DNA of 64,000 nucleotides from IMG/VR virus record IMGVR_UViG_3300024308_000188, positions 124,001-188,000 of that record. The stretch is one strand, 5' to 3'. Numbering within the stretch: position 1 is the first letter of the stretch; each line of letters begins with the position of its first letter. Position numbers and translations under genes: made by a program. This document shows positions 1 to 52,983 of this stretch, piece after piece. Below the pieces are notes generated by a model, which saw only the letters and a list, made by a program, of their open reading frames with translations, ran no database searches and was not told where the DNA came from.

Positions 1-1
1 T

Positions 2-127
2 GATCTGCTTACCGGAATTCCAGCTGGTGAAACTAAAATGGAATCCATTGAACATCTTGTAACAGCAGTTAAGATAGTCACAACTGGCGAAGCCCGTATA
101 GTTCTGTCTATCAAAGACAGTATATAA
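2..127 (+). CDS. 3' end of a gene entering from the left window edge
   Basis: Open frame from base 2 (DLLTGIPAGETKMESIEHLVTAVKIVTTGEARIVLSIKDSI) to TAA 125-127. Confidence 0.55.
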   Translation, partial: DLLTGIPAGETKMESIEHLVTAVKIVTTGEARIVLSIKDSI

Positions 128-129
128 AT

Positions 130-480
130 TTCCCTGACCTGCCAAACTTTGCATGTATTTGTTTGGCAACTAAACTCAGGAACTGGATTGTGTCTGCGCT
201 ACATCCTTTCCGATAGTTTGTGTAAGAATTTCTTACGGTCTTTTTTATTTCGGCACTCTAGCGTCCTCTAAGTGCTGTTTCTGGTCGCAAGACTGGTTTT
301 ACAAAACAAGCTTATTCGTTTGCATCGACATGCGAGATACGTGAGTAGCTGTCATGAGAAATTCTTTGTTTTGTATTAGCGCCACCGAATCTGATTGGCG
401 ATCTGATCACGTTTATCAAAGCATATAAGATAGATGGTTATAGTGTAATGCTTTCCACTAGAAGCTGTTTGTTGAAATTG
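130..480 (+). ncRNA. candidate structured non-coding RNA region A
   Basis: No ORF of 60 aa or more; consecutive stems TGCCAAAC/GTTTGGCA, GGAT/ATCC, CGGCACT/AGTGCTG, CTGGTC-GCAA-GACTGG, TTGCAT/ATGCGA, CGCCA/TGGCG. Confidence 0.45.
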
Positions 481-524
481 CTTTTCAGTGACTTTCCATG
501 TTTCAACAGGTAAACATGGTTAAT

Positions 525-599
<75 letters not shown>

Positions 600-618
600 T
601 TTTCAACAGGTAACAAAA

Positions 619-702
619 ATGCTTCCAGATTATTCAGAATTAAAACCCTATCTGCTTTCTCTTGTTTTAGTTTTTGTTATTTTGATTGCGCTTAGTTTTT
701 GA
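619..702 (+). CDS. 27 aa single-TM membrane peptide
   Basis: MLPDYSELKPYLLSLVLVFVILIALSF; AGGT upstream of ATG; below the ORF track cutoff. Confidence 0.45.
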   Translation: MLPDYSELKPYLLSLVLVFVILIALSF

Positions 703-832
703 TTCCAACACTAAACTTATTTCAGTTAGCTAAGTAACTTAAGATAGTCCTGCACTTAGCCGCGTAGGAGACTATGAAAAGTTTGTGGTTTAAGTGTATC
801 ACTGAACAGGAATCTTTATTTGGTAATCATTT

Positions 833-1165
833 ATGGAACCAGAGTTTTTAAATTGCCCTGAATTTTATTCTAAACATTTTCTTGAACTTAACAATAAAGA
901 AAAATTCTGCGCTTTTTATTGGAGTCAGATGCGAAGATTTACAACGCTTAAGCAAGCTTTAACTTCTTTACCTGCAAATAGAATACCTTACAGATGCGCT
1001 TTAATTGTTTTGCGCGAAAAGAAATGTCGTTGGCCTGAAGTAGAATTCTTGATAGCCCAAACTTCTTACTCAAAAGGTTTGTATTTGAATTACATGAAAA
1101 TTTTAGTTGAACGAAACCAATTGACTACAGAAGAATTTGAAGATATTTTGAATATGTTAAAGTAG
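833..1165 (+). CDS. hypothetical protein
   Basis: 110 aa ORF with phage-like composition. Confidence 0.6.
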   Translation: MEPEFLNCPEFYSKHFLELNNKEKFCAFYWSQMRRFTTLKQALTSLPANRIPYRCALIVLREKKCRWPEVEFLIAQTSYSKGLYLNYMKILVERNQLTTEEFEDILNMLK

Positions 1166-1174
1166 ATTCCACTT

Positions 1175-1640
1175 TAGATCTGCAAGCAGAGACATTTTTT
1201 GTCTTAGGTCAGAACAGCCGTTGCTTGTGCGCTGGTATGCAGTGCAAAGTTTATTATGTCAAGCTAGATCCCTTGACTAGACTTTATACGAAGTAGCCTA
1301 ACTTCGAGATTTTTAGTGGAATCTCCTTTAACATCTTTGTCTGTTCGATCTCCTTTTAGGTACGTGGGGTTCCAAGCAAGTTGTGTCGAACAGGCATTCT
1401 AATTTTTCGCGGCATTAGTTTAAGCAGTCCTTGAAAAAGTTTTGTGTGAGGCGGATTCTTCCTTGCCGCTGTGCTGATGAACTTATAGAGGAAAAACAAC
1501 GAGACAATACTTGCGTCCCTCCAAGTCGGTTAGTATTGTGAGTATCTCACGCACTCATTCGTTATTTCAAAACATGAACGTGCTGACGCGAACTCCCGCT
1601 GAGAGTACAAACCTTAATCTAGCATTAAGCAATGTTTAGA
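1175..1640 (+). ncRNA. candidate large structured non-coding RNA region B (~460 nt)
   Basis: No ORF; at least 12 stems tile the region, e.g. CTGTTCGA/TCGAACAG, ACAATACT/AGTATTGT, GTCAAG/CTTGAC, CGAAGT/ACTTCG, CTTAAT/ATTAAG; G-U pairs favour the + strand. Confidence 0.55.
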
Positions 1641-1973
1641 CTTTGAATTGTTGTAGGTTTTTGGACTTTTTTCCTTGCTCCAATTCTTGGGTCGTGTATT
1701 TGAAATGCCGCTATACAGGAATATTCATGGTAACTATATTCATCTTTTTTCTAACGATTTGTATTAACCGCGAAAACAATTTACGGCGGTCATCCGTAGA
1801 AAGTTTTCGTATAACAACTAACATTCAACGCATAACAGATTACTTTGACCTTAAAGGTTGGTTAACTGTTCGCGTTGTACAAGTTGAGCATAAACCTGCT
1901 CACTATAAGCACTCGTTGATATGATGCTTGGCGATTTGTTATTTACATGACTCCTTATCTTGTTGAGAGGGTA

Positions 1974-2177
1974 AGAACAAATCTCGGTAGCCGTAATACC
2001 GATATTAAATAATCCAGCAGGTGGGTTTGTTGTTCGCATTTTGGACAAGGAAACCAAACCCACCGAATCAAATAGATTTTTGTTCTGACGGTAAGATTCA
2101 ACTTTCGCACTGGCTTTGTTCGAGCACCAGTACATATTACAGTCTGTTGCGTTTTGCCGTCAGAACAAAAATCTATT
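1974..2177 (+). ncRNA. structured element C with a 21 bp perfect inverted repeat
   Basis: AATAGATTTTTGTTCTGACGG (2071-2091) pairs with 2157-2177; GGTGGGTTTG (2020-2029) pairs with 2055-2064. Confidence 0.5.
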
Positions 2178-2183
2178 AAACAC

Positions 2184-2209
2184 AAGGCCACTTTGCTGTG
2201 GCCTTTTTT
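2184..2209 (+). terminator. intrinsic terminator
   Basis: AAGGCCAC-tttgct-GTGGCCTT followed by TTTT. Confidence 0.8.
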
Positions 2210-2231
2210 GATCTTAACTGGGGAAATAACT

Positions 2232-2867
2232 ATGCAAGGTAAATTTTTTGTACTTGAAGGATTGGATGGTGTTGGTAAAAGTGAACAAGCAAAAATATTG
2301 ACGGCAAATCTTACTAAAATATTTGGCCCGACTATTCAAGTACGCGAACCTGGAGGAACTCCGATTGCAGAACAGATACGTACTGTGGTAAAAGGTAATG
2401 CTAATAACTCTGATGAAAAGTTTACTGTAGAAGCAGAAACTCTTTTAATGTTTGCTGCCAGAGCGCAATTGGTTCCTTACGTAAGATCACAACTTGCCGC
2501 TGGCGTTAATGTTGTTGCAGATCGTTGGGATTTTTCAACAAGAGCTTTTCAGTGTGGAGGTAAAGGTTTTCCACTTGAGCACTTTTATAACCTGCGTAAA
2601 ATACTGAGTTTAGATACCTTGGTTCCTGATATGATTTTTTACGGAACTAACTCAGGCAAAGTAAAAGAGCCTGAAGATCGAATTGAGTTTGAGTATTTTG
2701 AGTTCAGAGAAAAGATTGGTGCCGAATATGACCGCATGTTTGCTCTTAGCAATATGGATCATACTGTTGCGAAAAGTTTAGTCACTTTCGACATAAATGG
2801 AGTTAGTATTGAAGATACTGCGGAAATGATTTTAATGTGTGCGCGTAAAGCTTTTGGTGATGTATGA
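2232..2867 (+). CDS. tmk: thymidylate kinase
   Basis: FVLEGLDGVGKS P-loop, REPGGT, LLMFAARAQ, DRWDFST motifs; start moved to MQGKF after a GGGA RBS. Confidence 0.93.
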   Translation: MQGKFFVLEGLDGVGKSEQAKILTANLTKIFGPTIQVREPGGTPIAEQIRTVVKGNANNSDEKFTVEAETLLMFAARAQLVPYVRSQLAAGVNVVADRWDFSTRAFQCGGKGFPLEHFYNLRKILSLDTLVPDMIFYGTNSGKVKEPEDRIEFEYFEFREKIGAEYDRMFALSNMDHTVAKSLVTFDINGVSIEDTAEMILMCARKAFGDV

Positions 2868-3307
2868 GAATATTATGCCACTTAAACAGCCCTAGACTCA
2901 CATTTTCTGGTGTGCGTTGGACAATGGCCGAAGCCTATCGAAAACTTTCTGATTTTGCAGAACTTAGTTCTGCGGATAAAAATCGAATAGTGGCCGAAGC
3001 AGGACAAGCTACCGTTCGCGTATTTTCAAGCGTATTCATTGATAAAGATCTTGTTACTGAGATTACTTTCCTACCTACCAATGAAATGACTTTGCAGCAA
3101 ATTGAAGAATACGAAATTCTATCTGTCGATCTTTCCGATGAAAAATTAAAACCTGCCGAACTCAGTGCTTTGATTGATCGCATATCAAATCCCGATAAAG
3201 GCAAGATAATGATTTTATCTGGAACCAAAGTTAAAGAAGCTCCGAGGCTTTCTCCTTCTTTAACACGCGCAATTAAAAAAGCACTGAAAATAAAACATCC
3301 AAGTTAG
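2864..3307 (+). CDS. hypothetical protein
   Basis: ATGA overlap with tmk stop; 147 aa. Confidence 0.7.
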   Translation: MRILCHLNSPRLTFSGVRWTMAEAYRKLSDFAELSSADKNRIVAEAGQATVRVFSSVFIDKDLVTEITFLPTNEMTLQQIEEYEILSVDLSDEKLKPAELSALIDRISNPDKGKIMILSGTKVKEAPRLSPSLTRAIKKALKIKHPS

Positions 3308-3310
3308 ATC

Positions 3311-3342
3311 AAAAAAGGGAACCTCTTTCGGGGTTCCCTTTT
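3311..3342. terminator. bidirectional intrinsic terminator
   Basis: AAAAAAGGGAACCTC-TTTC-GGGGTTCCCTTTT between convergent genes. Confidence 0.85.
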
Positions 3343-3346
3343 GCAT

Positions 3347-3550
3347 TTATTCTGACAGTTGTTTAAAGCGATCTAAAAATTGACCGTCCTTGGCTTTTTC
3401 TGGACTTGCCAATAGTAATGTTGCAAGTCTGTATATTCCACGTTGTTTGTTATCACTGCTATTACGCAATTCAAAATTTTCTGCAATTGACTTTTCAAGA
3501 TCCTCCAGAGTTTTAGTTCCTTCGATCACTTCTTGAATAACTTCTTTCAT
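3347..3550 (-). CDS. hypothetical protein (67 aa, isolated minus-strand gene)
   Basis: AAGGAG RBS 7 nt before ATG (MKEVIQEVIEG); converges on the bidirectional terminator. Confidence 0.75.
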   Translation of the reverse strand: MKEVIQEVIEGTKTLEDLEKSIAENFELRNSSDNKQRGIYRLATLLLASPEKAKDGQFLDRFKQLSE

Positions 3551-34887: not shown

Positions 34888-36870
34888 ATGGCTAAAGCAA
34901 AAGCAAAATCTGCAAATACTTATGATGAAGATAGTATTCAGGTTCACAAAGGTTTAGCTGGTGTTAGATTAAACGCTGGCATGTACATGGGTGAGCTTGG
35001 CGATTCAATGATGTATCGCATGGGCAAAGAAGCTGTTGAAAACAGCCGCGATGAATACGAAGCTGGACGCAACAACGCAATCTATGTAGCCTTTAATAAC
35101 AAAACAAGTGAATACGTTTTTGCCGACTGCGCTCAAGGTATTCCTGTTGGAATGAAAACAGTTGAAGGTAAAAAAGTAAGCGCATTAACAGTAATTCTTA
35201 CTGAACTTCATGCTGGCGGAAAATTTGATGTAAAAGCTTATCAGACTTCAGGTGGTACGCACGGTGTTGGTATTTCTGCGGTCAATGCTTTATCAAAAGA
35301 ACTTGAGGTCTGGACTTGTCGTGAAGATCAGTGGTACTACCAAAGTTTTTCATGCGGAAAAGAAACCAGTCCTGTTAAAAAGGTTCCAGACACTTTCCTC
35401 AAGAAAAAGTTTGGTTATCTTTTGCCGCTCAAGAAAAAGTTTAAGCGACTTGGCACTATCATTCGCTTGGTTCCAGATCAAAGCGTGATAAGCGTTGATG
35501 CTAGTCGTACCTCAAAACTTAAAACATATACCCAAGCTGTTTTGGAAGAACAAAAGTTTGCTGATTATTTAAAGTTCATGAGTACCATGAATAGCAAGCT
35601 TTATATCGGTTTCCTAAACCTTGAAACAAACAAAGAACAGGTTTTCTACAATGATAAAGGTTTGGGTGCTGTAGTCAGTTCAATAATTTCTGATCATGAT
35701 TTAGAGCCTTTGGGTAAGCCATTCGAGTTCGATGGCTCAAGCCTGAAAGTTGCTATTCAATGGTCTAATCACTATGACAGTGATCTGTTCAGAAGTTATG
35801 TAAATAGTAGTCCAACAATAGATCATGGTACGCATGTAAATGGTTTCCGTGCGGCCATGTCAAAAGCTTTGAAAAACTATCTGCCCAAAAAAGCAGGTAA
35901 GTTTAAGCCAGAAGATCTTTATGTTGGCGCAGTTGCTATTATCAACTGGAAAATGAACAGCGCTCAATTTAGTGGTCAGGTAAAAGATAAACTGGTATCT
36001 AAAATCGATAACGAAGTTTGTGATTTACTGACTCAACCATTAACCGATTTTTTTGCAAAGAACAAAACATTAGCCAAGCAGATTATAAAACGCGCAAGTG
36101 ATGTTGCGGCTTCCCGTGAAGATCTTGCTAAAACAATGAAAGGCATGAGCGAAGTTAAAAAAGGTGGAAGTAAGCTGCCGATAAAACTTTATGAAGCTCC
36201 AGATTGTAAACCGCATGAGCGTGAGCTGTATTTTGTCGAAGGCGATTCGGCTGGCGGTACTGCCAAAAATGCTCGTGGCTTTAATCAGGAAGTTTTAAAA
36301 CTTGGCGGTAAAATTCCAAACGCATTGAATGTTAGTCTAAGTGCCTTACTTTCAAATGACCGCATTCAAGATATGCTGAACAGTTTGGGAGTTGACATAA
36401 AAAGTTTGGATGTTAAAGCTGATAATCCTACATTCAGTACAAAGAATCTGCGAGTTGCTGTTGCAATGTTGCTTGCTGATGCTGATGCTGATGGATCTCA
36501 CATTAACGTACTTATCACCGCATTTTTCTATAAACTTATGCCCGACTTTATTAAAGAAGGTCGTTTGTTTGTTGTTGACGCTCAATTGTACAACGCACTC
36601 GTTAATGGTGTGCATTACAGCGGAAACACAATGGAAGAGTGTTTAGCTAAGTTACCAAAAAATGCTCCGAAGGGAAGTGTGTTCCGTGCAAAAGGTTGGG
36701 GAGAGACAGATGCAGATTTACTTGAAGCCATAGCATTTGATATTAACAACAGAAAGTTGATTCAAATTGAATATGGCAAAGTTCAAGAAGATCTTGCGTT
36801 TTACAGATCAGTTGTAGGTGAAGATGCCTCTGCCAGACGGCAATTGTTGGGGTTAAGTTCCAACGATTAA
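34888..36870 (+). CDS. gyrB: type IIA topoisomerase, GyrB/ParE-like subunit
   Basis: GHKL ATPase (EAVENSRDE, D..QGIP, LHAGGKFD, SGGTHGVGISAVNALS), TOPRIM EGDSAGG and DADADGSHI, KGWGE. Confidence 0.95.
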   Translation: MAKAKAKSANTYDEDSIQVHKGLAGVRLNAGMYMGELGDSMMYRMGKEAVENSRDEYEAGRNNAIYVAFNNKTSEYVFADCAQGIPVGMKTVEGKKVSALTVILTELHAGGKFDVKAYQTSGGTHGVGISAVNALSKELEVWTCREDQWYYQSFSCGKETSPVKKVPDTFLKKKFGYLLPLKKKFKRLGTIIRLVPDQSVISVDASRTSKLKTYTQAVLEEQKFADYLKFMSTMNSKLYIGFLNLETNKEQVFYNDKGLGAVVSSIISDHDLEPLGKPFEFDGSSLKVAIQWSNHYDSDLFRSYVNSSPTIDHGTHVNGFRAAMSKALKNYLPKKAGKFKPEDLYVGAVAIINWKMNSAQFSGQVKDKLVSKIDNEVCDLLTQPLTDFFAKNKTLAKQIIKRASDVAASREDLAKTMKGMSEVKKGGSKLPIKLYEAPDCKPHERELYFVEGDSAGGTAKNARGFNQEVLKLGGKIPNALNVSLSALLSNDRIQDMLNSLGVDIKSLDVKADNPTFSTKNLRVAVAMLLADADADGSHINVLITAFFYKLMPDFIKEGRLFVVDAQLYNALVNGVHYSGNTMEECLAKLPKNAPKGSVFRAKGWGETDADLLEAIAFDINNRKLIQIEYGKVQEDLAFYRSVVGEDASARRQLLGLSSND

Positions 36871-37805: not shown

Positions 37806-39449
37806 ATGAAATCAAAAAAGCCGCCAGCAAAAACAAAGAAAGTTTCTAAGACTGAGTTGGGAGATATTAAACAACATAAAAAGTCGAAGAAAAATTTACC
37901 CGCAGTTGTTGAACCTAATCAATTCAAACTGCCTTCCACTGTACTGATGAAAACTATTGTCAAAGAAGATTTGGCAAACTTTGCAAAAAGAAATTTAACT
38001 CATTACGGTGAATACGTTGTACAAGATCGTGCTGTTCCAGAATTCCGTGATGGATTAAAGCCAGTTCACCGCCACATTATTTATGCAATGTCTCAGCTGA
38101 ATTTATTCGGTTCTGACTTTAAAAAGTGTGCGCGTATTGTTGGTGATACAATTGGTAAGTATCATCCTCACGGTGACTCTGCAACGTATGGTGCATTAGT
38201 TACGTTAGCCAATACAATTCCAAAACTTATTCAAGGTCGAGGAAATTTTGGCAGTCCACTCGATATGGCGGCAGCTCAGCGTTATACTGAAGCGCGTTTG
38301 AGTGATTACAGCAAACTTTTTCTTTTGGATAAAGGTTATCTTGAAGTTGTTCCGCGTATAAACAACTTTGATGACAGCGAAAAAATTCCGTTGTATTTGC
38401 CTTCGCTTCTTCCAACAATGCTGTTGATTGGAAATGCTGGTGGTATTGCCTACGGTGTTCGTGCTTGTAATCCTGCTTTTGAAATTGAAGGCGTTACAAA
38501 ACTTATTCAAATTGTATTGGAAAAAGGCGATTTGAAATCTTCTGATTGTGTAAAGCATTTAAAAATTCAAGCTCCTTTTGGATCTGATTGCGTTAGCACA
38601 CCAGAAGAACTTGCAAGCTTTATTGAAACAGGTAGAGCAAAGGCAATAAAATATTGTCCGAAAGTTCAAGTTGATTACAAAAATAAAATCGTTGAAATTG
38701 TTTCTTATTCTCCCGGTTTCGCATCTGAAGATGGCGTTGCTAAAAAACGTGATAAGATTTTAGAATTACCCGAAGTTAGTCGTTGGGTAAGTGACTGTGG
38801 TGATAAACGTCCGAACGCTGGCCCTTATGGTGCATATTATTATGTTGTACCAAAACGTGGAATGTCAGATGACGGCCTTTTTGATTTAGCTGAAAAAATT
38901 CGTAAGATGTTGACTGGCAGTGAGTTCTATAACTTAGGACTTACAATAAACAACGTCGATGGAACTGCTAAATTCCTTTACTGTAACTTTGCGACCTATA
39001 TTAAAAACTGGGTTCGCTATCGTGTGGAATTGGAAAAGCGTTATCTGGAAAACATTATTGCAAAACGCGAACGCGATTTGTGGGAATACAACGTATTGTC
39101 CTACGCTGTTATCAACAAGAATAAAATCTTGGAAGTAATGAAAAAAGCTTTGGACAAAGATGATCCAGATACTTACACTGCAAAAACATTGAAGATTCCT
39201 CAAGATGAAGCTACTTTCATTTTGGAATTGAAAATGCGTAGGCTGGCAAAACTTGAACTGAAAGCGCTACAGGACAAGATTAAAATTGCTACTGCCGACA
39301 TTAAAGGATGGAAACGCGATCACAAAGATCCTAATCCTCGTATCGCTTCTTCCTTGACCGAATCTGTAAATAAGTATGTACGGATGGTAAATGCTTCAAT
39401 CGCAGACACTAAAAAGTCTGAGAAGAAGCGCAAGAAAAAAGCAGACTGA
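37806..39449 (+). CDS. gyrA: type IIA topoisomerase, GyrA/ParC-like subunit lacking the C-terminal pinwheel
   Basis: [53 protein letters not shown] (catalytic Tyr); only 547 aa. Confidence 0.95.
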
Positions 39450-45480: not shown

Positions 45481-46290
45481 ATGTTTAGTTCACCAGAAAA
45501 TAGTCCTTATGGAGTGTTGCCAGAACATACAATACCTTTGGTTGAAATAGAAGAATCTTTGTGTGAACCTTATATTCATGGTCAAACAGTAAAAGTCAAA
45601 AAGCTTCCAAGGTTTCAACCAGTATGTCACATTATAATTCGCCCACCTGAAGCCAAACAAGTTGTTGTAGAAGAAAGTTTCGAGCAAGATTTTATTCAAC
45701 AAAAATACACAACTGTAGATCTCAGCAAACTTTCTCGCTACAAAAGAACAGCCGAACAAAAAGAAGTCATGCAGGAAGTTGACATCGAAGTTGATATTTC
45801 TCCACCTGACAATCTGATACGTTTAAAAACTGCCCATATAAAAAACTTTCCTAAAATACTTCAAACTAAATCAGGTTTGATAAAAGATGTTTTTATAAAA
45901 GAATATCTTCCTCAAATTTTAGGTATTGATGAAGCTTCTGCTTATGTAGAGGCATTCGCAAAAGACGGACTCGGCTTATCTGAATTTGAGATAAGCGTTG
46001 ATATGATTCCATATATTCATAACGCGATCAAGACTGATTTCGTTAGCCTTATCCTAAAACAATTGACTAACCTAAGTGAAGAAACCCGACAAGCTTATAT
46101 TATAGGTTATGTAACTGATGCTCTTGCATCTGCGCGTTATCTAGCTAAAAATAATCTTGCGGCTCAACAGCACAGACGTTACCAAGAAAGACTGGACAAT
46201 CCTGCCGGATATGTTGCTGGCGTTGGAATGAAAAAATCTAAGGTAATTCGTGATGGTAAAGCAGATAAAGAAAAAGAAGCCAATAGGTAA
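45481..46290 (+). CDS. hypothetical protein upstream of TerL (small terminase by position only)
   Basis: GGGGA RBS before MFSSPE; overlaps the TerL start. Confidence 0.6.
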   Translation: MFSSPENSPYGVLPEHTIPLVEIEESLCEPYIHGQTVKVKKLPRFQPVCHIIIRPPEAKQVVVEESFEQDFIQQKYTTVDLSKLSRYKRTAEQKEVMQEVDIEVDISPPDNLIRLKTAHIKNFPKILQTKSGLIKDVFIKEYLPQILGIDEASAYVEAFAKDGLGLSEFEISVDMIPYIHNAIKTDFVSLILKQLTNLSEETRQAYIIGYVTDALASARYLAKNNLAAQQHRRYQERLDNPAGYVAGVGMKKSKVIRDGKADKEKEANR

Positions 46291-49201
46291 AGCCAAAAAA
46301 CCTAGTGCAATTAAACCATTAGATGATTTATTCAATTTGTTGGGTGAAGATGACGATGAAAGCGTCACAATAGTACATGACGACGATGACGACGATGATG
46401 GCCATCATTTTAAGCATGATTTAGAAGATGGCCATGAAGTCTTAGATCTCGAACAACTTATATATGATGAACTGGATAATGCTAGGCCGATCTCTAAAGA
46501 TTTGCGTATAGACGACAGTTCTATGCCGATAGCAAAAAACTTCTTACAGTTTGCTAATGATGAAAGTTTTCTTAGTTCCACGCCTTATCTCGAACAGGCC
46601 ATAATAGGTATCAAACTTTTTGCTGAGTATTGTCCAAGACCTGAATGTTCTGATTTAAAATGGTTTTCTGATGATGGACATTCGGCAGATGAACCATTAG
46701 CAACACTTTCCAGAAAAGTGTCTCTTTTACATCATGGTGTTTGTCCAAAGTGTGGCGCACGTAAATCCGAACTTATTGCAAGTGGTGAACTAAATTTCTA
46801 TAACGAACTTGTAGTTGTTGCTGGACAGCGTTGTGTTACTGGCGATACTCATATTTTCACTGGAAAAGGTATTGAAAGAATTGGAGATCTTGTTCCGCGC
46901 AATGCTAAACAAGGTTACAATGATTTTAAATATCCTGTATTCAACGGTGAAAAGCTTGAGACAACAAAAGAATTTTATATAACGAAAGCCGAACACGTTT
47001 ACACACTACAGCTGGATAATGGATCTACTTTAAGTGGAACTCTTGACCATCCTGTTCGTGTTGAAAAGTTTGGTTATCGTGCTTTGCACCAAATAAAAGC
47101 TGGTGAGCAAGTTGTTGTACAAACCGGACAAAATTGTTGGGGAAATTTAAACTGCCCTTATACAGTTGATGAATTACGCTCTATAGGATCTGATATTACA
47201 AATCGACTAGACTTGTTGGTTGATACAGTAGCTGGTAAAGGCTTACATCCAGATCTTTTAAAATACAGTATGAAAAATTGTCGAGAATTTCTACGTGGAG
47301 TATTCGACAACAACACAACGCAATATCCTGTTGCTTACCACCAATTAGTAAAAGATGTTTATGCCTTGCTGCTAAACATTGGCATTCTGCCTACAATTCA
47401 AAATACCTCAGAAACAATCTCCATTTCTATCTCAAACGAAAACCGAAATATATTATTTGATGATCACAGATCCGTCAAAAGAAATCGGCATCTTTTATCC
47501 GTTGTTAGCTGCGGAGTTACAGATAGAACTGAAGTCATGTACGATGTTACAATGCCTATCACACAACATTTTATTACCAATGGCATTGATTCACATAACA
47601 GCGGCAAGTCTGCGGTTGTTACCATGATAAGTGCTTATATAGTGCATTTGTTTTTGATGTGTGGTAAGCCCACTGAACTTTTCAATATTCGTAATAACGA
47701 AATATTGCATGGAACTTTCCTTGCGCTTACACTTGGACAAGCAACACAAAACTTATGGGAACCTTTTCTCGGTTACATAAATAATAGTCCTTGGTTTAAA
47801 GCTTATCACTTAATGCTTCGTCGTTATGAAAAGAAATACGGAGAAGTTCTACTAAAGCTAAAAGATACCTTTATTGATTATCGTCATAGAAACCTTAAAC
47901 TTTATCCGGCAACTCCAGACAAACGTGTACTTCGTGGTCGTACTCGTATACTCGGAGCCCTGGATGAACTTGGGTGGTTTGATTCTAATCGTGATAGTAA
48001 AAAAGTTAAGGATAACGCGCACGAAGTTTATAAAGCAATGTCAAACAGTTTGGCTACTGCCAGACAAAGTGAAAAGCGTTTAGTCGAACAAGGCTTTGAT
48101 CAATTCATGTTAACCGGATATATGTTGAACGTAAGTTCTCCAAATAATATCCGTGACAAAATCATGGAACTTTATAAACAAAGTTTGGGCAGTCGTAAGA
48201 TGCTTGGCCTTCATCGTCCAACATGGAAAATGAATCCACATATTCCATTTGATGGTGAATTGATACGTGAAGAATATCGTAAAGATCCTATTGGAGCTGC
48301 ACGAGACTTTGGAGCCGAGCCAAGTTTATCAAGTAATCCGTTTATGAGTAATCACAGATTACTTGAAGAGACTGTTAGAACTAGCGGTAAAAATTGGGTT
48401 AAATATGCGCTCAAAACTATTCGTATCAGTCGAGACGAAAAGCACAGAACCGTTGAGTTACTTAACGTCAAACAAAATGGCTCTAGGAGTGTTATGGCTA
48501 TTGATGCTGGATTCTCTAACAACTGTTTTGCCATAGTCTGTGGATCTTTGCATGATGGTATTCCTCACATGGATTGCCTTTTAGAAATAAATGCTCTTCC
48601 TGGTATTCCAATAAGTTTCACTTCTGTTTTTGCAGATGCTGTACTTCCACTTATTGAACAGCGCAATTGCAGTATTCTTTTGGCAGACCGTTGGAATAGT
48701 ATCAAGTTATTGCAAGATGCTCAAGCCACCTATGATAGTTTAAAAGTGTCAGGTCAATATAGCTTACGCTACAACGATATGTACGAAGTTAAAACAGCTA
48801 TTGAAATGGGTCAATTCAAAATACCAAACATTGAAGATCCTAGCATTAAAAATATCCTTGCTAGTAACCTCGATGATTATCCAGCGTGTTTTGAAGGTAG
48901 ACCTGTACATCATTTGCTGCTGCAACTTGCAACCGTTGTTGATGTTGGTAAGAAATCTGTTGAAAAAGGAAATGGATTCACCGATGATCTTTGGAGAGCA
49001 GCCGCGCTTTGTTATTTTGGTTTAACTAATCCAGATTATCAAGAGCATTTGGTTGGTGAGGTTGAAAGTAAAAAAGTTCAACCACCGTTAGCCCTGTTGA
49101 AGAAACTCACGGGCGGAATGAATGCGCTTACTGTTACAACCGGAAACAAAACGTATTCGGGTTCGACAAAATTCATCGGTGTAAAACGAACAGGAAAATA
49201 A
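46250..49201 (+). CDS. terL: terminase large subunit, intein-containing
   Basis: Walker A VAGQR/SGKS split by the intein; LRGRT, Walker B GALDELGWF, motif III NVSSP; nuclease AIDAG...FTDDLWRA. Confidence 0.9.
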   Translation: MMVKQIKKKKPIGKAKKPSAIKPLDDLFNLLGEDDDESVTIVHDDDDDDDGHHFKHDLEDGHEVLDLEQLIYDELDNARPISKDLRIDDSSMPIAKNFLQFANDESFLSSTPYLEQAIIGIKLFAEYCPRPECSDLKWFSDDGHSADEPLATLSRKVSLLHHGVCPKCGARKSELIASGELNFYNELVVVAGQRCVTGDTHIFTGKGIERIGDLVPRNAKQGYNDFKYPVFNGEKLETTKEFYITKAEHVYTLQLDNGSTLSGTLDHPVRVEKFGYRALHQIKAGEQVVVQTGQNCWGNLNCPYTVDELRSIGSDITNRLDLLVDTVAGKGLHPDLLKYSMKNCREFLRGVFDNNTTQYPVAYHQLVKDVYALLLNIGILPTIQNTSETISISISNENRNILFDDHRSVKRNRHLLSVVSCGVTDRTEVMYDVTMPITQHFITNGIDSHNSGKSAVVTMISAYIVHLFLMCGKPTELFNIRNNEILHGTFLALTLGQATQNLWEPFLGYINNSPWFKAYHLMLRRYEKKYGEVLLKLKDTFIDYRHRNLKLYPATPDKRVLRGRTRILGALDELGWFDSNRDSKKVKDNAHEVYKAMSNSLATARQSEKRLVEQGFDQFMLTGYMLNVSSPNNIRDKIMELYKQSLGSRKMLGLHRPTWKMNPHIPFDGELIREEYRKDPIGAARDFGAEPSLSSNPFMSNHRLLEETVRTSGKNWVKYALKTIRISRDEKHRTVELLNVKQNGSRSVMAIDAGFSNNCFAIVCGSLHDGIPHMDCLLEINALPGIPISFTSVFADAVLPLIEQRNCSILLADRWNSIKLLQDAQATYDSLKVSGQYSLRYNDMYEVKTAIEMGQFKIPNIEDPSIKNILASNLDDYPACFEGRPVHHLLLQLATVVDVGKKSVEKGNGFTDDLWRAAALCYFGLTNPDYQEHLVGEVESKKVQPPLALLKKLTGGMNALTVTTGNKTYSGSTKFIGVKRTGK
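46832..47599 (+). mobile_element. intein (256 aa) in the TerL Walker A motif, with a degenerate LAGLIDADG remnant
   Basis: Starts CVTGDTHIFT; block B GTLDHPV; block E-like EFLRGVFD; ends YDVTM..HFITNGIDSHN, +1 Ser. Confidence 0.92.
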
Positions 49202-50266: not shown

Positions 50267-52201
50267 ATGTTCAGTTTTAAGAAAACAATTCCTTCCACTT
50301 CTCGAAGTCGAGATCAAGAAGGGTTAGGTACGTCATCTAAAGATCGTGTTAGTGTTCGCAAAGCTGCTGAGGCAGAACAAAAGAAAACACGATCCGAACA
50401 ACAAGGCTTCAGATCTGAAAGTAACGCTTCAGCTGGCGCACGTATGAGTAGTTTAGACGTAAACTTAGATACCTCTTTATTGTTAGAAGGTATGGACAGT
50501 GATTTAAAAGATCAGCAACTGTTCAGAGTTTATCGTGATATGTACTGGCACGATCCTGTTTGTGGATCTTGTGCAGATTTATACTCAACACTTCCTTTTT
50601 CTGAATTTAGTTTGGCCGGAGCTTCGGACAAATATTTAGATCAATACAGAGAAGTAGTTGAACTCTTGAATCTGCGTACAGCAATGCCTCGTATTAGTAT
50701 TGACCATCAAGTTACTGGCGCATTCACTGCAACTATTTTGTACAACAGCCAGAAAAAGCAATTCATTGATTTGATGTGTCACAAATATGAAAACCTTACC
50801 GTACACTCTTTGCCATTATTTGGTCAAGATCCAATAATGTACTTGCAGCTTGATGCTGATATGAAACGTACTTTGGGTTTGCCTTCAAAACGCATAGAGC
50901 AAATACGTCAAAGTCTTGGTATAGAATTTTTTAACAAACTACTCAACGATCAAATTGAATTAGATCCAGTAGGTACTTTGTATGTTCCACGTAAAACTTT
51001 CTCTTATGGTGAAGGTGTTAGTTACTTTAAACGAGTGCTTCCACTTTGGTTGATTGAGAAAAATTTATATCGCGGAACACTGATTGAAAGTGGACGTAGA
51101 CAACGAGCCATACTTCACTTAATGTTAGGTGAAGAAGGTTGGGAACCTACACCACAAGATTACGAACAAGCAACTGATTTATTTCTTGATGCTGATGCTG
51201 ATCCTATAGGTGCTGTTGTCGCAACACGTTTAGGTATTAGCGTTAGCGAGTTAAGACCAGGTGGTGACTTTTGGAAAGTTACTGACATTTGGGATCAAAC
51301 AACTCCAGCAAAAATGAGAGCGCTTGGAATAAGTGAAGCTTTCTTGAGTGGTGACGCAAGTTATCAAACAATGGAAGGCTCAATGACTGTTTTCACTGAA
51401 ACAATGAGAGCATATCGTGATATGCAAACTCGTTGCATTTTCTACGATAAAGTATTTCCGTTAGTTTCTATGATGCACGGTAATACAATTCGTAAAGGTA
51501 AGATTGTTAAACGTGAAGGCTTGATGTCTGGAACTACAGAAGAACGCTTACGTTTAATGCAAGATGGTTCAAAACTTTTAATTCCAAATGTACATTGGGC
51601 AAAAAGTTTAAAGCCTGAGCAAGATCAATCTTATATGGAAATTCTTGATCGTATGACTGCTGCTGGAATTCCAGTTCCAATACGAATGATGGCTGCTGCT
51701 GGTGGATTTAACTTGGATCAGCTGTTATTAAATCAAGATGAAGATTTTGCTATTCAACGTCAACTTCTTGATTACAAAAAACGTGTTGCCGATATGACCG
51801 CTAAATATGCTGCTGCCGAAGGCGGTGGCGCTGAAGGCGGTGGCGGAGGAATGGGATCTTTCAGTTCTTCAAGTTCTGATCGTTATTTCAATCCAGATCG
51901 TTATCTCGATAAAGTAACTGCACAGCCACGGGGATTCAGTAATATTCTTGGAGGTGCTTCGCAAAATCTTTTACGTCACGATTTTGGTGAAGGAAGCGAG
52001 TTATATACTCACGATCATAGCGGTAAGAAAAAGCATGTATTTAATCAGACTGCGAAAAACAAGATGATCAATGCCAAAATTACAAAAGCCTTAGTTGCTA
52101 TGAGTAAGAGTGGTAATGCACCATTGTTAACGCACGAAACAACGACAAATTTAAAGCCAACGCAAAGAGAAATGCAACGGCTTCTTGGAGTAGTTAAATG
52201 A
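50267..52201 (+). CDS. probable portal protein
   Basis: 644 aa near TerL; RDMYWHDPVCGSCADLYSTLPFSEF resembles the portal wing helix; Gly/Ser-rich C-terminal tail. Confidence 0.62.
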   Translation: MFSFKKTIPSTSRSRDQEGLGTSSKDRVSVRKAAEAEQKKTRSEQQGFRSESNASAGARMSSLDVNLDTSLLLEGMDSDLKDQQLFRVYRDMYWHDPVCGSCADLYSTLPFSEFSLAGASDKYLDQYREVVELLNLRTAMPRISIDHQVTGAFTATILYNSQKKQFIDLMCHKYENLTVHSLPLFGQDPIMYLQLDADMKRTLGLPSKRIEQIRQSLGIEFFNKLLNDQIELDPVGTLYVPRKTFSYGEGVSYFKRVLPLWLIEKNLYRGTLIESGRRQRAILHLMLGEEGWEPTPQDYEQATDLFLDADADPIGAVVATRLGISVSELRPGGDFWKVTDIWDQTTPAKMRALGISEAFLSGDASYQTMEGSMTVFTETMRAYRDMQTRCIFYDKVFPLVSMMHGNTIRKGKIVKREGLMSGTTEERLRLMQDGSKLLIPNVHWAKSLKPEQDQSYMEILDRMTAAGIPVPIRMMAAAGGFNLDQLLLNQDEDFAIQRQLLDYKKRVADMTAKYAAAEGGGAEGGGGGMGSFSSSSSDRYFNPDRYLDKVTAQPRGFSNILGGASQNLLRHDFGEGSELYTHDHSGKKKHVFNQTAKNKMINAKITKALVAMSKSGNAPLLTHETTTNLKPTQREMQRLLGVVK

Positions 52202-52983
52202 AGTTAGTCCGTGACCTTTTTTATAAAGGAACTGCGGCAATATCTGACTGGCTTGTATTCCACCGATTCATTCGTCAGCCATTATCTTTCTTTGAGGATA
52301 ATCTGAGGAAAGGAATTTTGTCTGAAGTAAAAGCAATTGAAGATATTCTCTTTGCTTTTACTTCAGAACATTCCGCTTGGTTTACAGACAGACACTTCAA
52401 TCAATACGGTGCATTTATGTGCCGTGATTTGATAAACAAAGAACTTTTCGATATAAATGATTATGTAGCTACGGATCTATATGATGCTGTGGCGCGGTCA
52501 TCCATCAAAAGTAATTTTTCAGTTGAAGTGCAAAAGATGGTTGCTGAGCTTTCTAAGAAATTTTCAGAAGATCCTCGTTTCCAAAACACAACAACTGAAA
52601 CTTATTTGAATTTATTTCACAGAACGCTACCTTTATTGTTTTTGAGATTTTTTGCACCAAAAGATTTGGTGAATTTCTCTAACAATTTCTTATATGCTAT
52701 CGCAGCATTAGTAGCGTTTGATCGTAAAGGCTACTCAGAGTTTACCTCACCTGAAGCCATAAAAACAAAAACCTTTCTTGAGGATTTTTTGTTTGAAGTT
52801 GTCAACGATAGCTTTCACATATACAGCTACAATTTTTATATGGTTGTGCGTCGTATGTTTCCTGAAAGAATGTCTAACAGAATGGCAACCGTGCAATTCA
52901 AATTCAAATCCCTTCAAAGTGATAATTACATATATGCGCCAAAACGCATGGTTAGTGATGTTGCCCTGTTCAGGAGAAAATGA
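52198..52983 (+). CDS. hypothetical protein
   Basis: ATGA overlap; 261 aa. Confidence 0.75.
   Translation: MKLVRDLFYKGTAAISDWLVFHRFIRQPLSFFEDNLRKGILSEVKAIEDILFAFTSEHSAWFTDRHFNQYGAFMCRDLINKELFDINDYVATDLYDAVARSSIKSNFSVEVQKMVAELSKKFSEDPRFQNTTTETYLNLFHRTLPLLFLRFFAPKDLVNFSNNFLYAIAALVAFDRKGYSEFTSPEAIKTKTFLEDFLFEVVNDSFHIYSYNFYMVVRRMFPERMSNRMATVQFKFKSLQSDNYIYAPKRMVSDVALFRRK

What the first reader, a model, noticed from the sequence alone, without database searches (positions are those of the whole stretch)
1974..2209. 21 bp perfect inverted repeat with a competing alternative helix before the tmk terminator
2071-2091 pairs perfectly with 2157-2177, extends by wobble pairs and encloses ACTGG/CCAGT, giving a ~107 nt rod. 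The same left arm (AGATTTTTGTTCT) can instead pair with AGAACAAATCT (1974-1984) to close a junction holding TCGGTA/TACCGA and GGTGGGTTTG/CAAACCCACC. Mutually exclusive folds just upstream of an intrinsic terminator and the dTMP kinase gene suggest a switch or attenuator; an RNase III substrate, decoy dsRNA or DNA cruciform are alternatives.
Basis: partly seen in the sequence, partly recalled or inferred. Interest (0 to 1): 0.65.

Follow-up and report, generated by a model that had tools for sequence, protein, structure and literature searches.

The report
Hairpin end of large phage RNA
The long inverted repeat is real and far beyond chance, but it is a fixed hairpin, not a switch, and it forms the 3' end of a conserved, highly folded ~1 kb non-coding RNA, matching no known RNA family, that lies beside the only tRNA gene of an uncultivated jumbo phage.

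Summary
2071-2091 pairs perfectly with 2157-2177. This is the longest inverted repeat in the 214.5-kb phage record, and about 5e-5 such repeats are expected by chance. It extends to a 31-pair, 107-nt rod, and a canonical terminator (2184-2211) follows, 20 nt before tmk.

The switch reading does not hold:
- The alternative helix has an equilibrium probability of 1e-9 to 1e-12.
- It costs 19.5 kcal/mol.
- It never touches the terminator stem.
- It loses three adjacent pairs in the only diverged relatives. All three hairpins there keep their pairing through compensatory changes.

The segment is the 3' domain of a gene-free stretch, 1164-2211. No ORF in it is conserved, and single-base indels are scattered through it. 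It is as conserved as the flanking genes, or more so. It folds into about 40 helices:
- The consensus energy z-score against column shuffles is -12.9.
- 21 pairs are compensatory, against 5.7 +/- 2.2 in shuffles.
- The plus strand is favoured by 53 kcal/mol.

It lies 565 nt downstream of the phage's only tRNA gene, and Rfam has no match for it.

My best reading is a new large structured phage RNA, like GOLLD and ROOL in size and setting but not a member of either. The rod and terminator would form its constitutive 3' end, and the rod may be an RNase III site. Only two clades (five sequences) are known, and expression is not shown.

The parts
525..599 (+). tRNA-Gly (UCC). It is the only tRNA gene of the phage and lies 565 nt upstream of the structured RNA.
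   Evidence: ARAGORN and Rfam at 59.6 bits. It is also the only tRNA in the complete 319.5-kb relative G001.
833..1165 (+). Small ORF of 110 aa with unknown function. Its stop codon abuts the first helix of the RNA.
   Evidence: ORF list. It is conserved as a 110-aa ORF at 73% identity in clade B. Pfam and PHROGs give no match.
1164..2211 (+). Whole conserved, gene-free, structured region, proposed to be a ~1.05-kb non-coding RNA.
   Evidence: No conserved ORF, and 1-, 2- and 4-nt indels are scattered through it. RNAalifold gives 322 pairs in about 40 helices, 21 of them compensatory. The energy z-score against column shuffles is -12.9. The plus strand folds at -306.6 and the minus strand at -253.6 kcal/mol. 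Rfam has no family for it.
1164..1324 (+). 5' domain: a multi-branch fold closed by a 15-pair helix, 1164-1181 / 1307-1324.
   Evidence: Three compensatory pairs lie in its inner hairpins.
1409..1711 (+). Central domain, closed by helix 1409-1416 / 1704-1711. It holds a 105-nt core (1503-1607) that is identical in all five versions.
   Evidence: A 258-nt contig covering 1403-1660 has word depth ~300 in an RNA-labelled wastewater run, against 2-16 beside it.
1974..1984 (+). It is not conserved.
   Evidence: Three adjacent pairs are broken in clade B. It forms only in nascent RNA of clade A.
1984..2002 (+). Hairpin Pa: 6 pairs and a 7-nt loop.
   Evidence: Pair 1985/2001 changes from C-G to U-A in clade B.
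2020..2064 (+). Hairpin Pb: a 10-pair stem with an inner 3-pair stem.
   Evidence: Three two-sided changes at 2021/2063, 2022/2062 and 2029/2055, and none broken.
2071..2177 (+). Rod hairpin Pc. It has 21 perfect pairs plus 10 more (three G.U pairs, one mismatch) and a conserved irregular tip.
   Evidence: Pair 2088/2160 changes from A-U to G-C in clade B, and pair 2100/2148 from A-U to G.U in L011 and L012. Only 6-8 of its 107 nt differ between clades, against about 16% for the region as a whole.
2184..2211 (+). Intrinsic terminator: an 8-pair GC-rich stem, a 6-nt loop and six U.
   Evidence: It is identical in all versions except one loop base.
2232..2867 (+). tmk (dTMP kinase), with GGGGAA at 2219-2224 as its ribosome-binding site. 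There is no room for a promoter after the terminator.
   Evidence: Pfam PF02223 at E 1.4e-22. No sigma-70-like site lies on the plus strand between 1740 and 2575.

Best explanation
Positions 1974-2209 are the 3'-terminal domain of a ~1.05-kb non-coding RNA (about 1164-2211, plus strand). The RNA is conserved and heavily base-paired. It is encoded by an uncultivated jumbo phage of about 320 kb, between a small ORF and tmk, 565 nt downstream of the phage's only tRNA gene.

The domain consists of two small hairpins, a 107-nt rod with 31 pairs, and an intrinsic terminator. All four are constitutive, so there is no switch.

Shown here:
- The fold is dominant.
- It is kept by compensatory changes.
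- It is specific to the plus strand.
- The region is non-coding.

Inferred:
- Transcription enters from upstream, together with the ORF and perhaps the tRNA.
- The RNA ends at the terminator.
- The rod keeps the terminator free of competing pairings and protects the 3' end.
- Because the rod is more than 20 bp of uninterrupted dsRNA, host RNase III probably cuts it. That would separate the RNA from the transcripts that read through into tmk, which has no promoter of its own.

The role of the whole RNA is unknown. By size, ornate fold and position next to a tRNA gene it works most like the large phage RNAs GOLLD and ROOL.
For: - The inverted repeat is real and exceptional.
- There is one dominant fold, and the terminator is independent of the proposed competition.
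- Five two-sided changes fall in the three hairpins. For the 3' domain alone, z = -11.1 and 2 pairs are broken, against 8.3 in shuffles.
- For the whole region, RNAalifold gives 322 pairs, 21 compensatory against 5.7 +/- 2.2 (maximum 14 in 80 shuffles), 19 broken against 33 +/- 5.6, and z = -12.9.
- The strand is plus. Consensus energy is -306.6 against -253.6 kcal/mol. Transitions at Watson-Crick pairs give G.U rather than A.C 15:9 and 23:7 on the plus strand, and the reverse on the minus strand.
- No ORF is conserved, and frame-breaking indels are scattered through the region.
- The region is as conserved as the flanking genes or more so. It holds a 105-nt invariant core, while the end of the upstream ORF diverges.
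- It is single-copy and lies next to the only tRNA in the complete relative.
- An RNA-labelled wastewater run holds a 258-nt piece of the central domain at about 20-100 times the depth of its neighbours.
- GOLLD and ROOL are large phage RNAs often found near tRNA genes (10.1101/2024.12.08.627333 and PMC5737381, read).
Against: - Only two clades are known (five distinct sequences, about 84% identity). Each compensatory pair is therefore a single evolutionary event, and no R-scape-grade statistic is possible.
- Expression is not shown. The runs labelled RNA are a guess and are contigs, and none covers 2002-2165.
- No promoter and no 5' end are defined.
- The rod is conserved in sequence more than structure alone requires. 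This hints at a partner or function that I have not identified.
- RNase III cleavage and read-through into tmk are inferences.
- The region could be a long structured spacer of a polycistronic mRNA rather than an RNA with a role of its own.
Confidence: 0.6

Rival explanations
1. Cis-acting switch or attenuator for tmk. Pairing of 1974-1984 with the left arm of the rod competes with the rod and sets the level of read-through at the terminator, perhaps in response to a nucleotide or a protein.
For: The complementarity exists in this sequence. It is predicted to form in the nascent transcript before the right arm is made, with probability 0.7-0.98. tmk has no visible promoter of its own and lies 20 nt after a terminator. 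There is a weak Rfam hit to Phe_leader, at 27 bits against a cut-off of 55.
Against: Equilibrium probability is 1e-9 to 1e-12, and the alternative fold is 19.5 kcal/mol worse. The terminator stem takes part in neither fold. Three adjacent pairs are lost in clade B, where the helix has probability 0.00 even in nascent RNA, yet rod, terminator and tmk start are kept. No Rfam riboswitch or leader reaches its threshold. The only candidate leader ORF (2021-2179) is frameshifted in clade B.
Confidence: 0.07
2. Structured intercistronic spacer of a polycistronic phage mRNA. The hairpins, above all the rod, are RNase III processing and stability sites like those of T7 early mRNA. The 1-kb region has no function apart from controlling the stability and relative amounts of the flanking messages.
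For: The rod has 21 uninterrupted Watson-Crick pairs, 31 with wobbles, which is enough for RNase III by established knowledge. It lies between two genes on the same strand with a terminator. The uneven depth of pieces in the RNA-labelled run fits processing.
Against: A processing site needs tens of nucleotides, not 1,050 nt with about 40 conserved helices and a 105-nt invariant core. The genome is otherwise tightly packed, and this is one of its three longest gene-free gaps. The record holds no phage RNase III or dsRNA-binding domain, so host enzyme would be needed.
Confidence: 0.22
3. DNA-level element: a cruciform at a replication origin or packaging site, or a miniature inverted-repeat transposable element.
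For: It is a long terminal-inverted-repeat-like pair around a 65-bp centre, in an AT-rich, gene-free region.
Against: The extension of the stem depends on G.U pairs, and one change is A-U to G.U. On DNA or on the minus strand these would be mismatches. It is single-copy in this record and in the complete relative. No target-site duplication flanks 2071 and 2177. The cumulative GC-skew turning point is about 12 kb away, at 112-114 kb of the record. The repeat sits at the same place in both clades with a compensatory change.
Confidence: 0.05

Closest known systems
GOLLD and ROOL RNAs (large ornate RNAs of phages and prophages)
   Same: Size class: about 1,050 nt here, against more than 800 nt for GOLLD and about 580 nt for ROOL. 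All are multi-domain folds with many helices, are encoded by phages, lie close to tRNA genes, and have no known protein partner or function (10.1101/2024.12.08.627333; PMC5737381).
   Different: There is no match to either Rfam model, even at E up to 10. The sequence and domain layout are different. Only two clades of one jumbo-phage lineage are known. Multimer formation is untested. The long near-perfect 31-pair rod followed by a terminator is not, to my knowledge, a described feature of either.
RNase III processing hairpins of phage mRNAs (T7 R1.1 and relatives; lambda sib)
   Same: A long double-stranded hairpin between phage genes on one strand. It is long enough (more than 20 bp) for RNase III. 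Cleavage would leave a hairpin-protected 3' end. This rests on established knowledge, not on a test here.
   Different: T7 sites are shorter and interrupted by an internal loop, and they are not followed directly by a terminator. Here the hairpin is the end of a 1-kb structured RNA. Cleavage was not tested.
Transcription attenuators and riboswitch expression platforms (for example the Phe leader and pyr leaders)
   Same: Hairpins followed by an intrinsic terminator directly upstream of a nucleotide-metabolism gene that has no promoter of its own.
   Different: The terminator stem has no competitor. The proposed alternative helix is neither stable nor conserved. There is no leader peptide and no aptamer family match.
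Type III toxin-antitoxin and similar 'RNA - terminator - gene' units
   Same: The order is the same: a structured RNA, then a terminator, then a protein gene that depends on read-through.
   Different: There are no tandem repeats in the RNA, and the downstream gene is an ordinary dTMP kinase.

Membership tests
GOLLD RNA / ROOL RNA (Rfam families) | Match to the family covariance model at or above the gathering score | tested here: not met
   cmscan of the whole window at gathering score found only the tRNA. Scans of 100-2400 and 1380-1730 at E up to 10 listed no GOLLD, ROOL, OLE, HEARO or raiA match.
GOLLD RNA / ROOL RNA (Rfam families) | Phage or prophage location, often near tRNA genes | tested here: met
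   The host genome is a jumbo phage: TerL, portal and DnaB-like helicase are present, and TerL is 40% identical to that of Erwinia phage Y3. The only tRNA gene lies 565 nt upstream.
GOLLD RNA / ROOL RNA (Rfam families) | Large multi-domain conserved secondary structure supported by covariation | tested here: inconclusive
   There are 322 pairs, 21 of them compensatory, with z = -12.9. This rests on only two clades.
GOLLD RNA / ROOL RNA (Rfam families) | Assembly into RNA-only multimers (nanocages) | not testable with these tools
   This needs native gels, mass photometry or cryo-EM.
Intrinsic (Rho-independent) terminator | GC-rich stem-loop followed directly by a U-tract on the transcribed strand | tested here: met
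   An 8-pair stem with 5 G-C pairs, a 6-nt loop and six T at 2206-2211. The stem energy is -13.6 kcal/mol. It is conserved in all five versions.
Riboswitch / transcription attenuator | An alternative structure that competes with the terminator stem | tested here: not met
   The terminator pairs only with itself, at probability 0.77-1.0. The alternative helix involves 1974-1984 and 2074-2086 only.
Riboswitch / transcription attenuator | Both alternative structures conserved among relatives | tested here: not met
   The alternative helix loses 3 of its 11 pairs in clade B and is not predicted there, whereas the hairpins covary.
Riboswitch / transcription attenuator | Ligand- or signal-dependent read-through | not testable with these tools
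   This needs in-line probing and in vitro transcription.
RNase III substrate | About two turns (20 bp or more) of regular double-stranded RNA | tested here: met
   There are 21 uninterrupted Watson-Crick pairs, and 31 pairs counting G.U.
RNase III substrate | Cleavage by the enzyme | not testable with these tools
   The record holds no phage-encoded RNase III or dsRNA-binding domain. A host enzyme is assumed.
MITE / repetitive palindromic element | Several copies, with terminal inverted repeats flanked by target-site duplications | tested here: not met
   It is single-copy in the own record and in the complete relative. It is absent from 50,697 phage records at blastn sensitivity. No flanking direct repeat is present.

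The most novel reading that the evidence does not exclude
The 1164-2211 region is a previously undescribed class of giant ornate phage RNA. It would be a functional analogue of GOLLD and ROOL in jumbo phages of Gram-negative or environmental hosts: made in large amounts, processed into a stable central domain (about 1403-1711), and with the 107-nt rod serving as a maturation site or an assembly arm.
Probability: 0.35. Interest if true: 0.7.

Novelty: new variant of a known kind. Interest (0 to 1): 0.55.

Why it matters
Very few bacterial or phage RNAs longer than 500 nt have a conserved ornate fold. Among them, GOLLD and ROOL still have no known function, although their cage-like structures have been solved. 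Another unrelated RNA of that size, again beside a tRNA gene but in a jumbo phage, would suggest that such RNAs are a recurrent phage invention. It would also give a fresh, sequence-independent case for asking what they do. For genome annotation, it shows that a striking pair of 'mutually exclusive helices' can be an accident of one lineage. Comparison with a relative at 84% identity was enough to separate the constitutive hairpins from the chance helix.

Tried and rejected
- **Known RNA family.** Rfam at gathering score over the whole window, and at E up to 10 over 100-2400 and 1380-1730, gave only the tRNA and sub-threshold noise: Phe_leader at 27 bits against 55, and Arrc14 at 27 against 99.
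- **Hidden gene.** No ORF is shared by the two clades, and 1-, 2- and 4-nt indels are scattered through the region, so no genetic code would rescue a frame.
- **More distant relatives, needed for real covariation statistics.** None of these searches found any:
  - Six IMG/VR pattern or protein scans found only the 319.5-kb near-twin.
  - One metagenome scan and one genome scan with the invariant 17-mer gave about 140 chance hits and nothing homologous.
  - blastn of 1-3400 against 50,697 phage records matched only the tRNA.
  - Protein searches with tmk, the 147-aa neighbour and the 110-aa upstream ORF found only the same two clades.
  - Remote homologues of the 110-aa ORF (32-50% identity) are not followed by the RNA where their contigs reach far enough to tell.
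- **Function of the upstream ORF.** Pfam, PHROGs and the ESM Atlas gave nothing usable. It is not a paralogue of the 140-aa gene before the tRNA.
- **Replication origin.** The GC-skew turning point is 12 kb away.
- **Paralogous RNA in the other 1.09-kb gap of the genome (107-108 kb).** There is no similarity.
- **Pseudoknot partner for the invariant CCUCC loop.** There is none inside the RNA.
- **Sigma-70 promoter for tmk or for the RNA.** The scan gives no more sites than shuffles do, and the nearest candidates are not conserved.
- **Phage-encoded RNase III or dsRNA-binding domain.** None is present in the record.

Full report
**Setting**

The window is bases 124,001-188,000 of a 214,526-bp IMG/VR virus record that CheckV rates 85% complete.
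- It is a jumbo phage. It has a large terminase, a portal protein, a DnaB-like helicase and a split topoisomerase II.
- Its terminase is only 40% identical to the nearest cultured phages, Erwinia phage Y3 and Dickeya phage JA11.
- A near-twin, G001, is a complete 319,518-bp genome with direct terminal repeats.
- Almost all genes in the window lie on the plus strand.

**Observation**

- The 21-bp perfect repeat 2071-2091 / 2157-2177 extends to 2102 / 2146 through three G.U pairs, seven more Watson-Crick pairs and one mismatch.
- The apical part holds ACTGG / CCAGT (2109-2113 / 2127-2131).
- It is the longest inverted repeat in the record, and the next is 16 bp.
- Thirty simulated genomes reached 12-15 bp, and about 5e-5 such repeats are expected.
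- A canonical terminator follows: an 8-pair stem at 2184-2205 (-13.6 kcal/mol) and six U.
- After it come a ribosome-binding site and the ATG of tmk at 2232.

**Is it a switch?**

In the window's own sequence the rod dominates.
- Its pairs have probability 0.8-1.0, and the alternative helix (1974-1984 with 2074-2086) 1e-12 to 7e-9.
- Forcing the alternative helix costs 19.5 kcal/mol.
- Part of the alternative helix does form in a nascent transcript that lacks the right arm, with probability 0.7-0.98.
- The terminator stem belongs to neither fold and is formed in both. The competition therefore has no route to termination.

Relatives settle the matter. Contigs carrying the same tmk fall into two clades:
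- Clade A is the window plus L016 and its twins, at 99-100% identity.
- Clade B is L005 (a 329-kb ENA contig), L011 and L012, at about 84% identity in the gene-free region.

In clade B, GAACAA of the alternative helix has become TCTTAG.
- Three adjacent pairs are lost.
- The helix has probability 0.00 even in nascent RNA.

The three hairpins, by contrast, keep their pairing:
- Pa changes at 1985/2001, from C-G to U-A.
- Pb changes at 2021/2063, 2022/2062 and 2029/2055.
- The rod changes at 2088/2160, from A-U to G-C.
- 2100/2148 goes from A-U to G.U in two sequences, and 2113/2127 from G-C to G.U.
- A new C-G pair appears at 2114/2126.

For the 3' domain alone:

| Measure | Observed | Column shuffles |
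|---|---|---|
| Consensus energy | -93.3 kcal/mol | -46.1 +/- 4.3 (z = -11.1) |
| Compensatory pairs | 5 | 1.1 (maximum 4 in 100) |
| Broken pairs | 2 | 8.3 |

**What the segment belongs to**

From the stop codon of the 110-aa ORF (1165) to the tmk start (2232) there is no credible gene. It is one of the three longest gene-free gaps in a tightly packed genome.
- No ORF is shared by the clades.
- Indels of 1, 2 and 4 nt are scattered along the region, so it is non-coding under any code.
- It is nevertheless conserved as well as the flanking genes or better.
- The boundary is sharp. The last 60 nt of the upstream ORF diverge strongly, and identity rises at the stop codon.
- Positions 1503-1607 are identical in all five versions.

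RNAalifold folds 1160-2215 into 322 pairs in about 40 helices:
- a 5' domain at 1164-1324;
- a long-range helix, 1325-1333 / 1961-1970;
- a central domain at 1409-1711;
- further hairpins;
- the 3' domain that is the finding.

Against 80 column shuffles that keep each column's conservation pattern:

| Measure | Observed | Shuffles |
|---|---|---|
| Consensus energy | -306.6 kcal/mol | -201.0 +/- 8.2 (z = -12.9) |
| Compensatory pairs | 21 | 5.7 +/- 2.2 (maximum 14) |
| Broken pairs | 19 | 33.4 +/- 5.6 |

The strand is plus.
- The minus strand reaches only -253.6 kcal/mol, with 13 compensatory and 31 broken pairs.
- I also used structures predicted from one sequence alone. On the plus strand, transitions at Watson-Crick pairs give G.U rather than A.C by 15:9 and 23:7. 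On the minus strand the ratio is reversed.
- The terminator's U-tract is also on the plus strand.

**Known families**

Rfam 15 has nothing for this region at gathering score. At E up to 10 there is only sub-threshold noise.

The region is single-copy in the window's record and in the complete relative. The only tRNA gene of both genomes, tRNA-Gly(UCC), lies 565 nt upstream.

GOLLD and ROOL are large, ornate phage and prophage RNAs that often lie near tRNA genes and have no known function (10.1101/2024.12.08.627333; PMC5737381). The present RNA resembles them in size, complexity and setting, but it fails the model-match test. I therefore call it like them, not one of them.

**Expression**

There is only a hint. 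DNA runs from subsurface, drinking-water, wastewater and air samples hold the stretch or parts of it.

One wastewater run is labelled RNA-Seq; the label is a guess, and the data are contigs. In it:
- a 258-nt contig covering 1403-1660 has word depth about 300;
- pieces at 1770-2000 have depth 14-16;
- the flanking genes have depth 2-10;
- nothing covers 2002-2165.

This pattern fits an abundant, processed central domain, but it does not show transcription.

**Mechanism, with its status**

Shown:
- The rod, Pa, Pb and the terminator are constitutive, conserved plus-strand RNA structures.
- They lie at the end of a long structured non-coding region.

Inferred:
- The RNA is transcribed from upstream, since no conserved promoter is seen.
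- It ends at the terminator.
- tmk, which has no room for a promoter after the terminator, depends on read-through.
- The rod keeps the terminator free of competing pairings and protects the 3' end.
- Because the rod is 21-31 bp of regular dsRNA, host RNase III probably cuts it. The record encodes no RNase III or dsRNA-binding domain.

The rod's sequence is conserved more strongly than pairing alone requires: 6-8 changes in 107 nt, against about 16% for the region. This is unexplained and suggests a specific partner.

**Limits**

- Two clades give one evolutionary comparison.
- I could not find more distant homologues by DNA patterns, by three neighbouring proteins, or by remote homologues of the upstream ORF.
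- The host is unknown.

**Verdict**

- The switch is not supported.

Noticed in passing
window 128-832: A 705-nt gene-free stretch around the phage's only tRNA gene (Gly-UCC, 525-599). It is 83-95% identical to clade B, but its consensus fold is only weakly better than shuffles (z = -3.1). A possible 25-codon ORF with a GGAG ribosome-binding site starts at 774.
   Followed up: partly
window 1503-1607: A 105-nt stretch identical in all five versions. Its main hairpin has a 14-nt invariant loop (1515-1528) containing CCUCC, the core of the anti-Shine-Dalgarno sequence. No complementary partner exists inside the RNA.
   Followed up: partly
window 1403-1660: In a wastewater run labelled RNA-Seq, a 258-nt contig of exactly this part has word depth ~300, against 2-16 for neighbouring pieces. 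Three further runs of the same study hold a similar share of the stretch. Its five differences from the window suggest a third, intermediate lineage.
   Followed up: partly
window 3313-3342: A 13-pair, GC-rich, bidirectional terminator-like hairpin between convergent genes: the tmk-orf147 operon and a 67-aa minus-strand gene. It is identical in clade B, although the flanks there are only 57-85% identical.
   Followed up: no
window 52321-52367: A 16-bp perfect inverted repeat with a 15-nt loop. It is the second longest in the genome, and it lies at the junction of the portal gene (50267-52201) and the next ORF.
   Followed up: no
outside the window: record 107018-108108 (window -16982 to -15892): The longest gene-free gap of the record (1,091 nt), among minus-strand genes. 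It holds homopolymer runs (T22, G7, C8). It has no sequence similarity to the RNA described here, and it is close to the cumulative GC-skew minimum at 112-114 kb.
   Followed up: partly
window 34888-36870 and 37806-39449: Topoisomerase II is encoded as two separate genes, with two small ORFs between them. The terminase large subunit (46250-49201) is unusually long at 983 aa.
   Followed up: no
window 2864-3307: A 147-aa ORF overlaps the tmk stop codon (ATGA). It has no family match and diverges fast: 56% identity to clade B, against 90% for tmk. In some clade A contigs the gene call is shortened to 127 aa.
   Followed up: no
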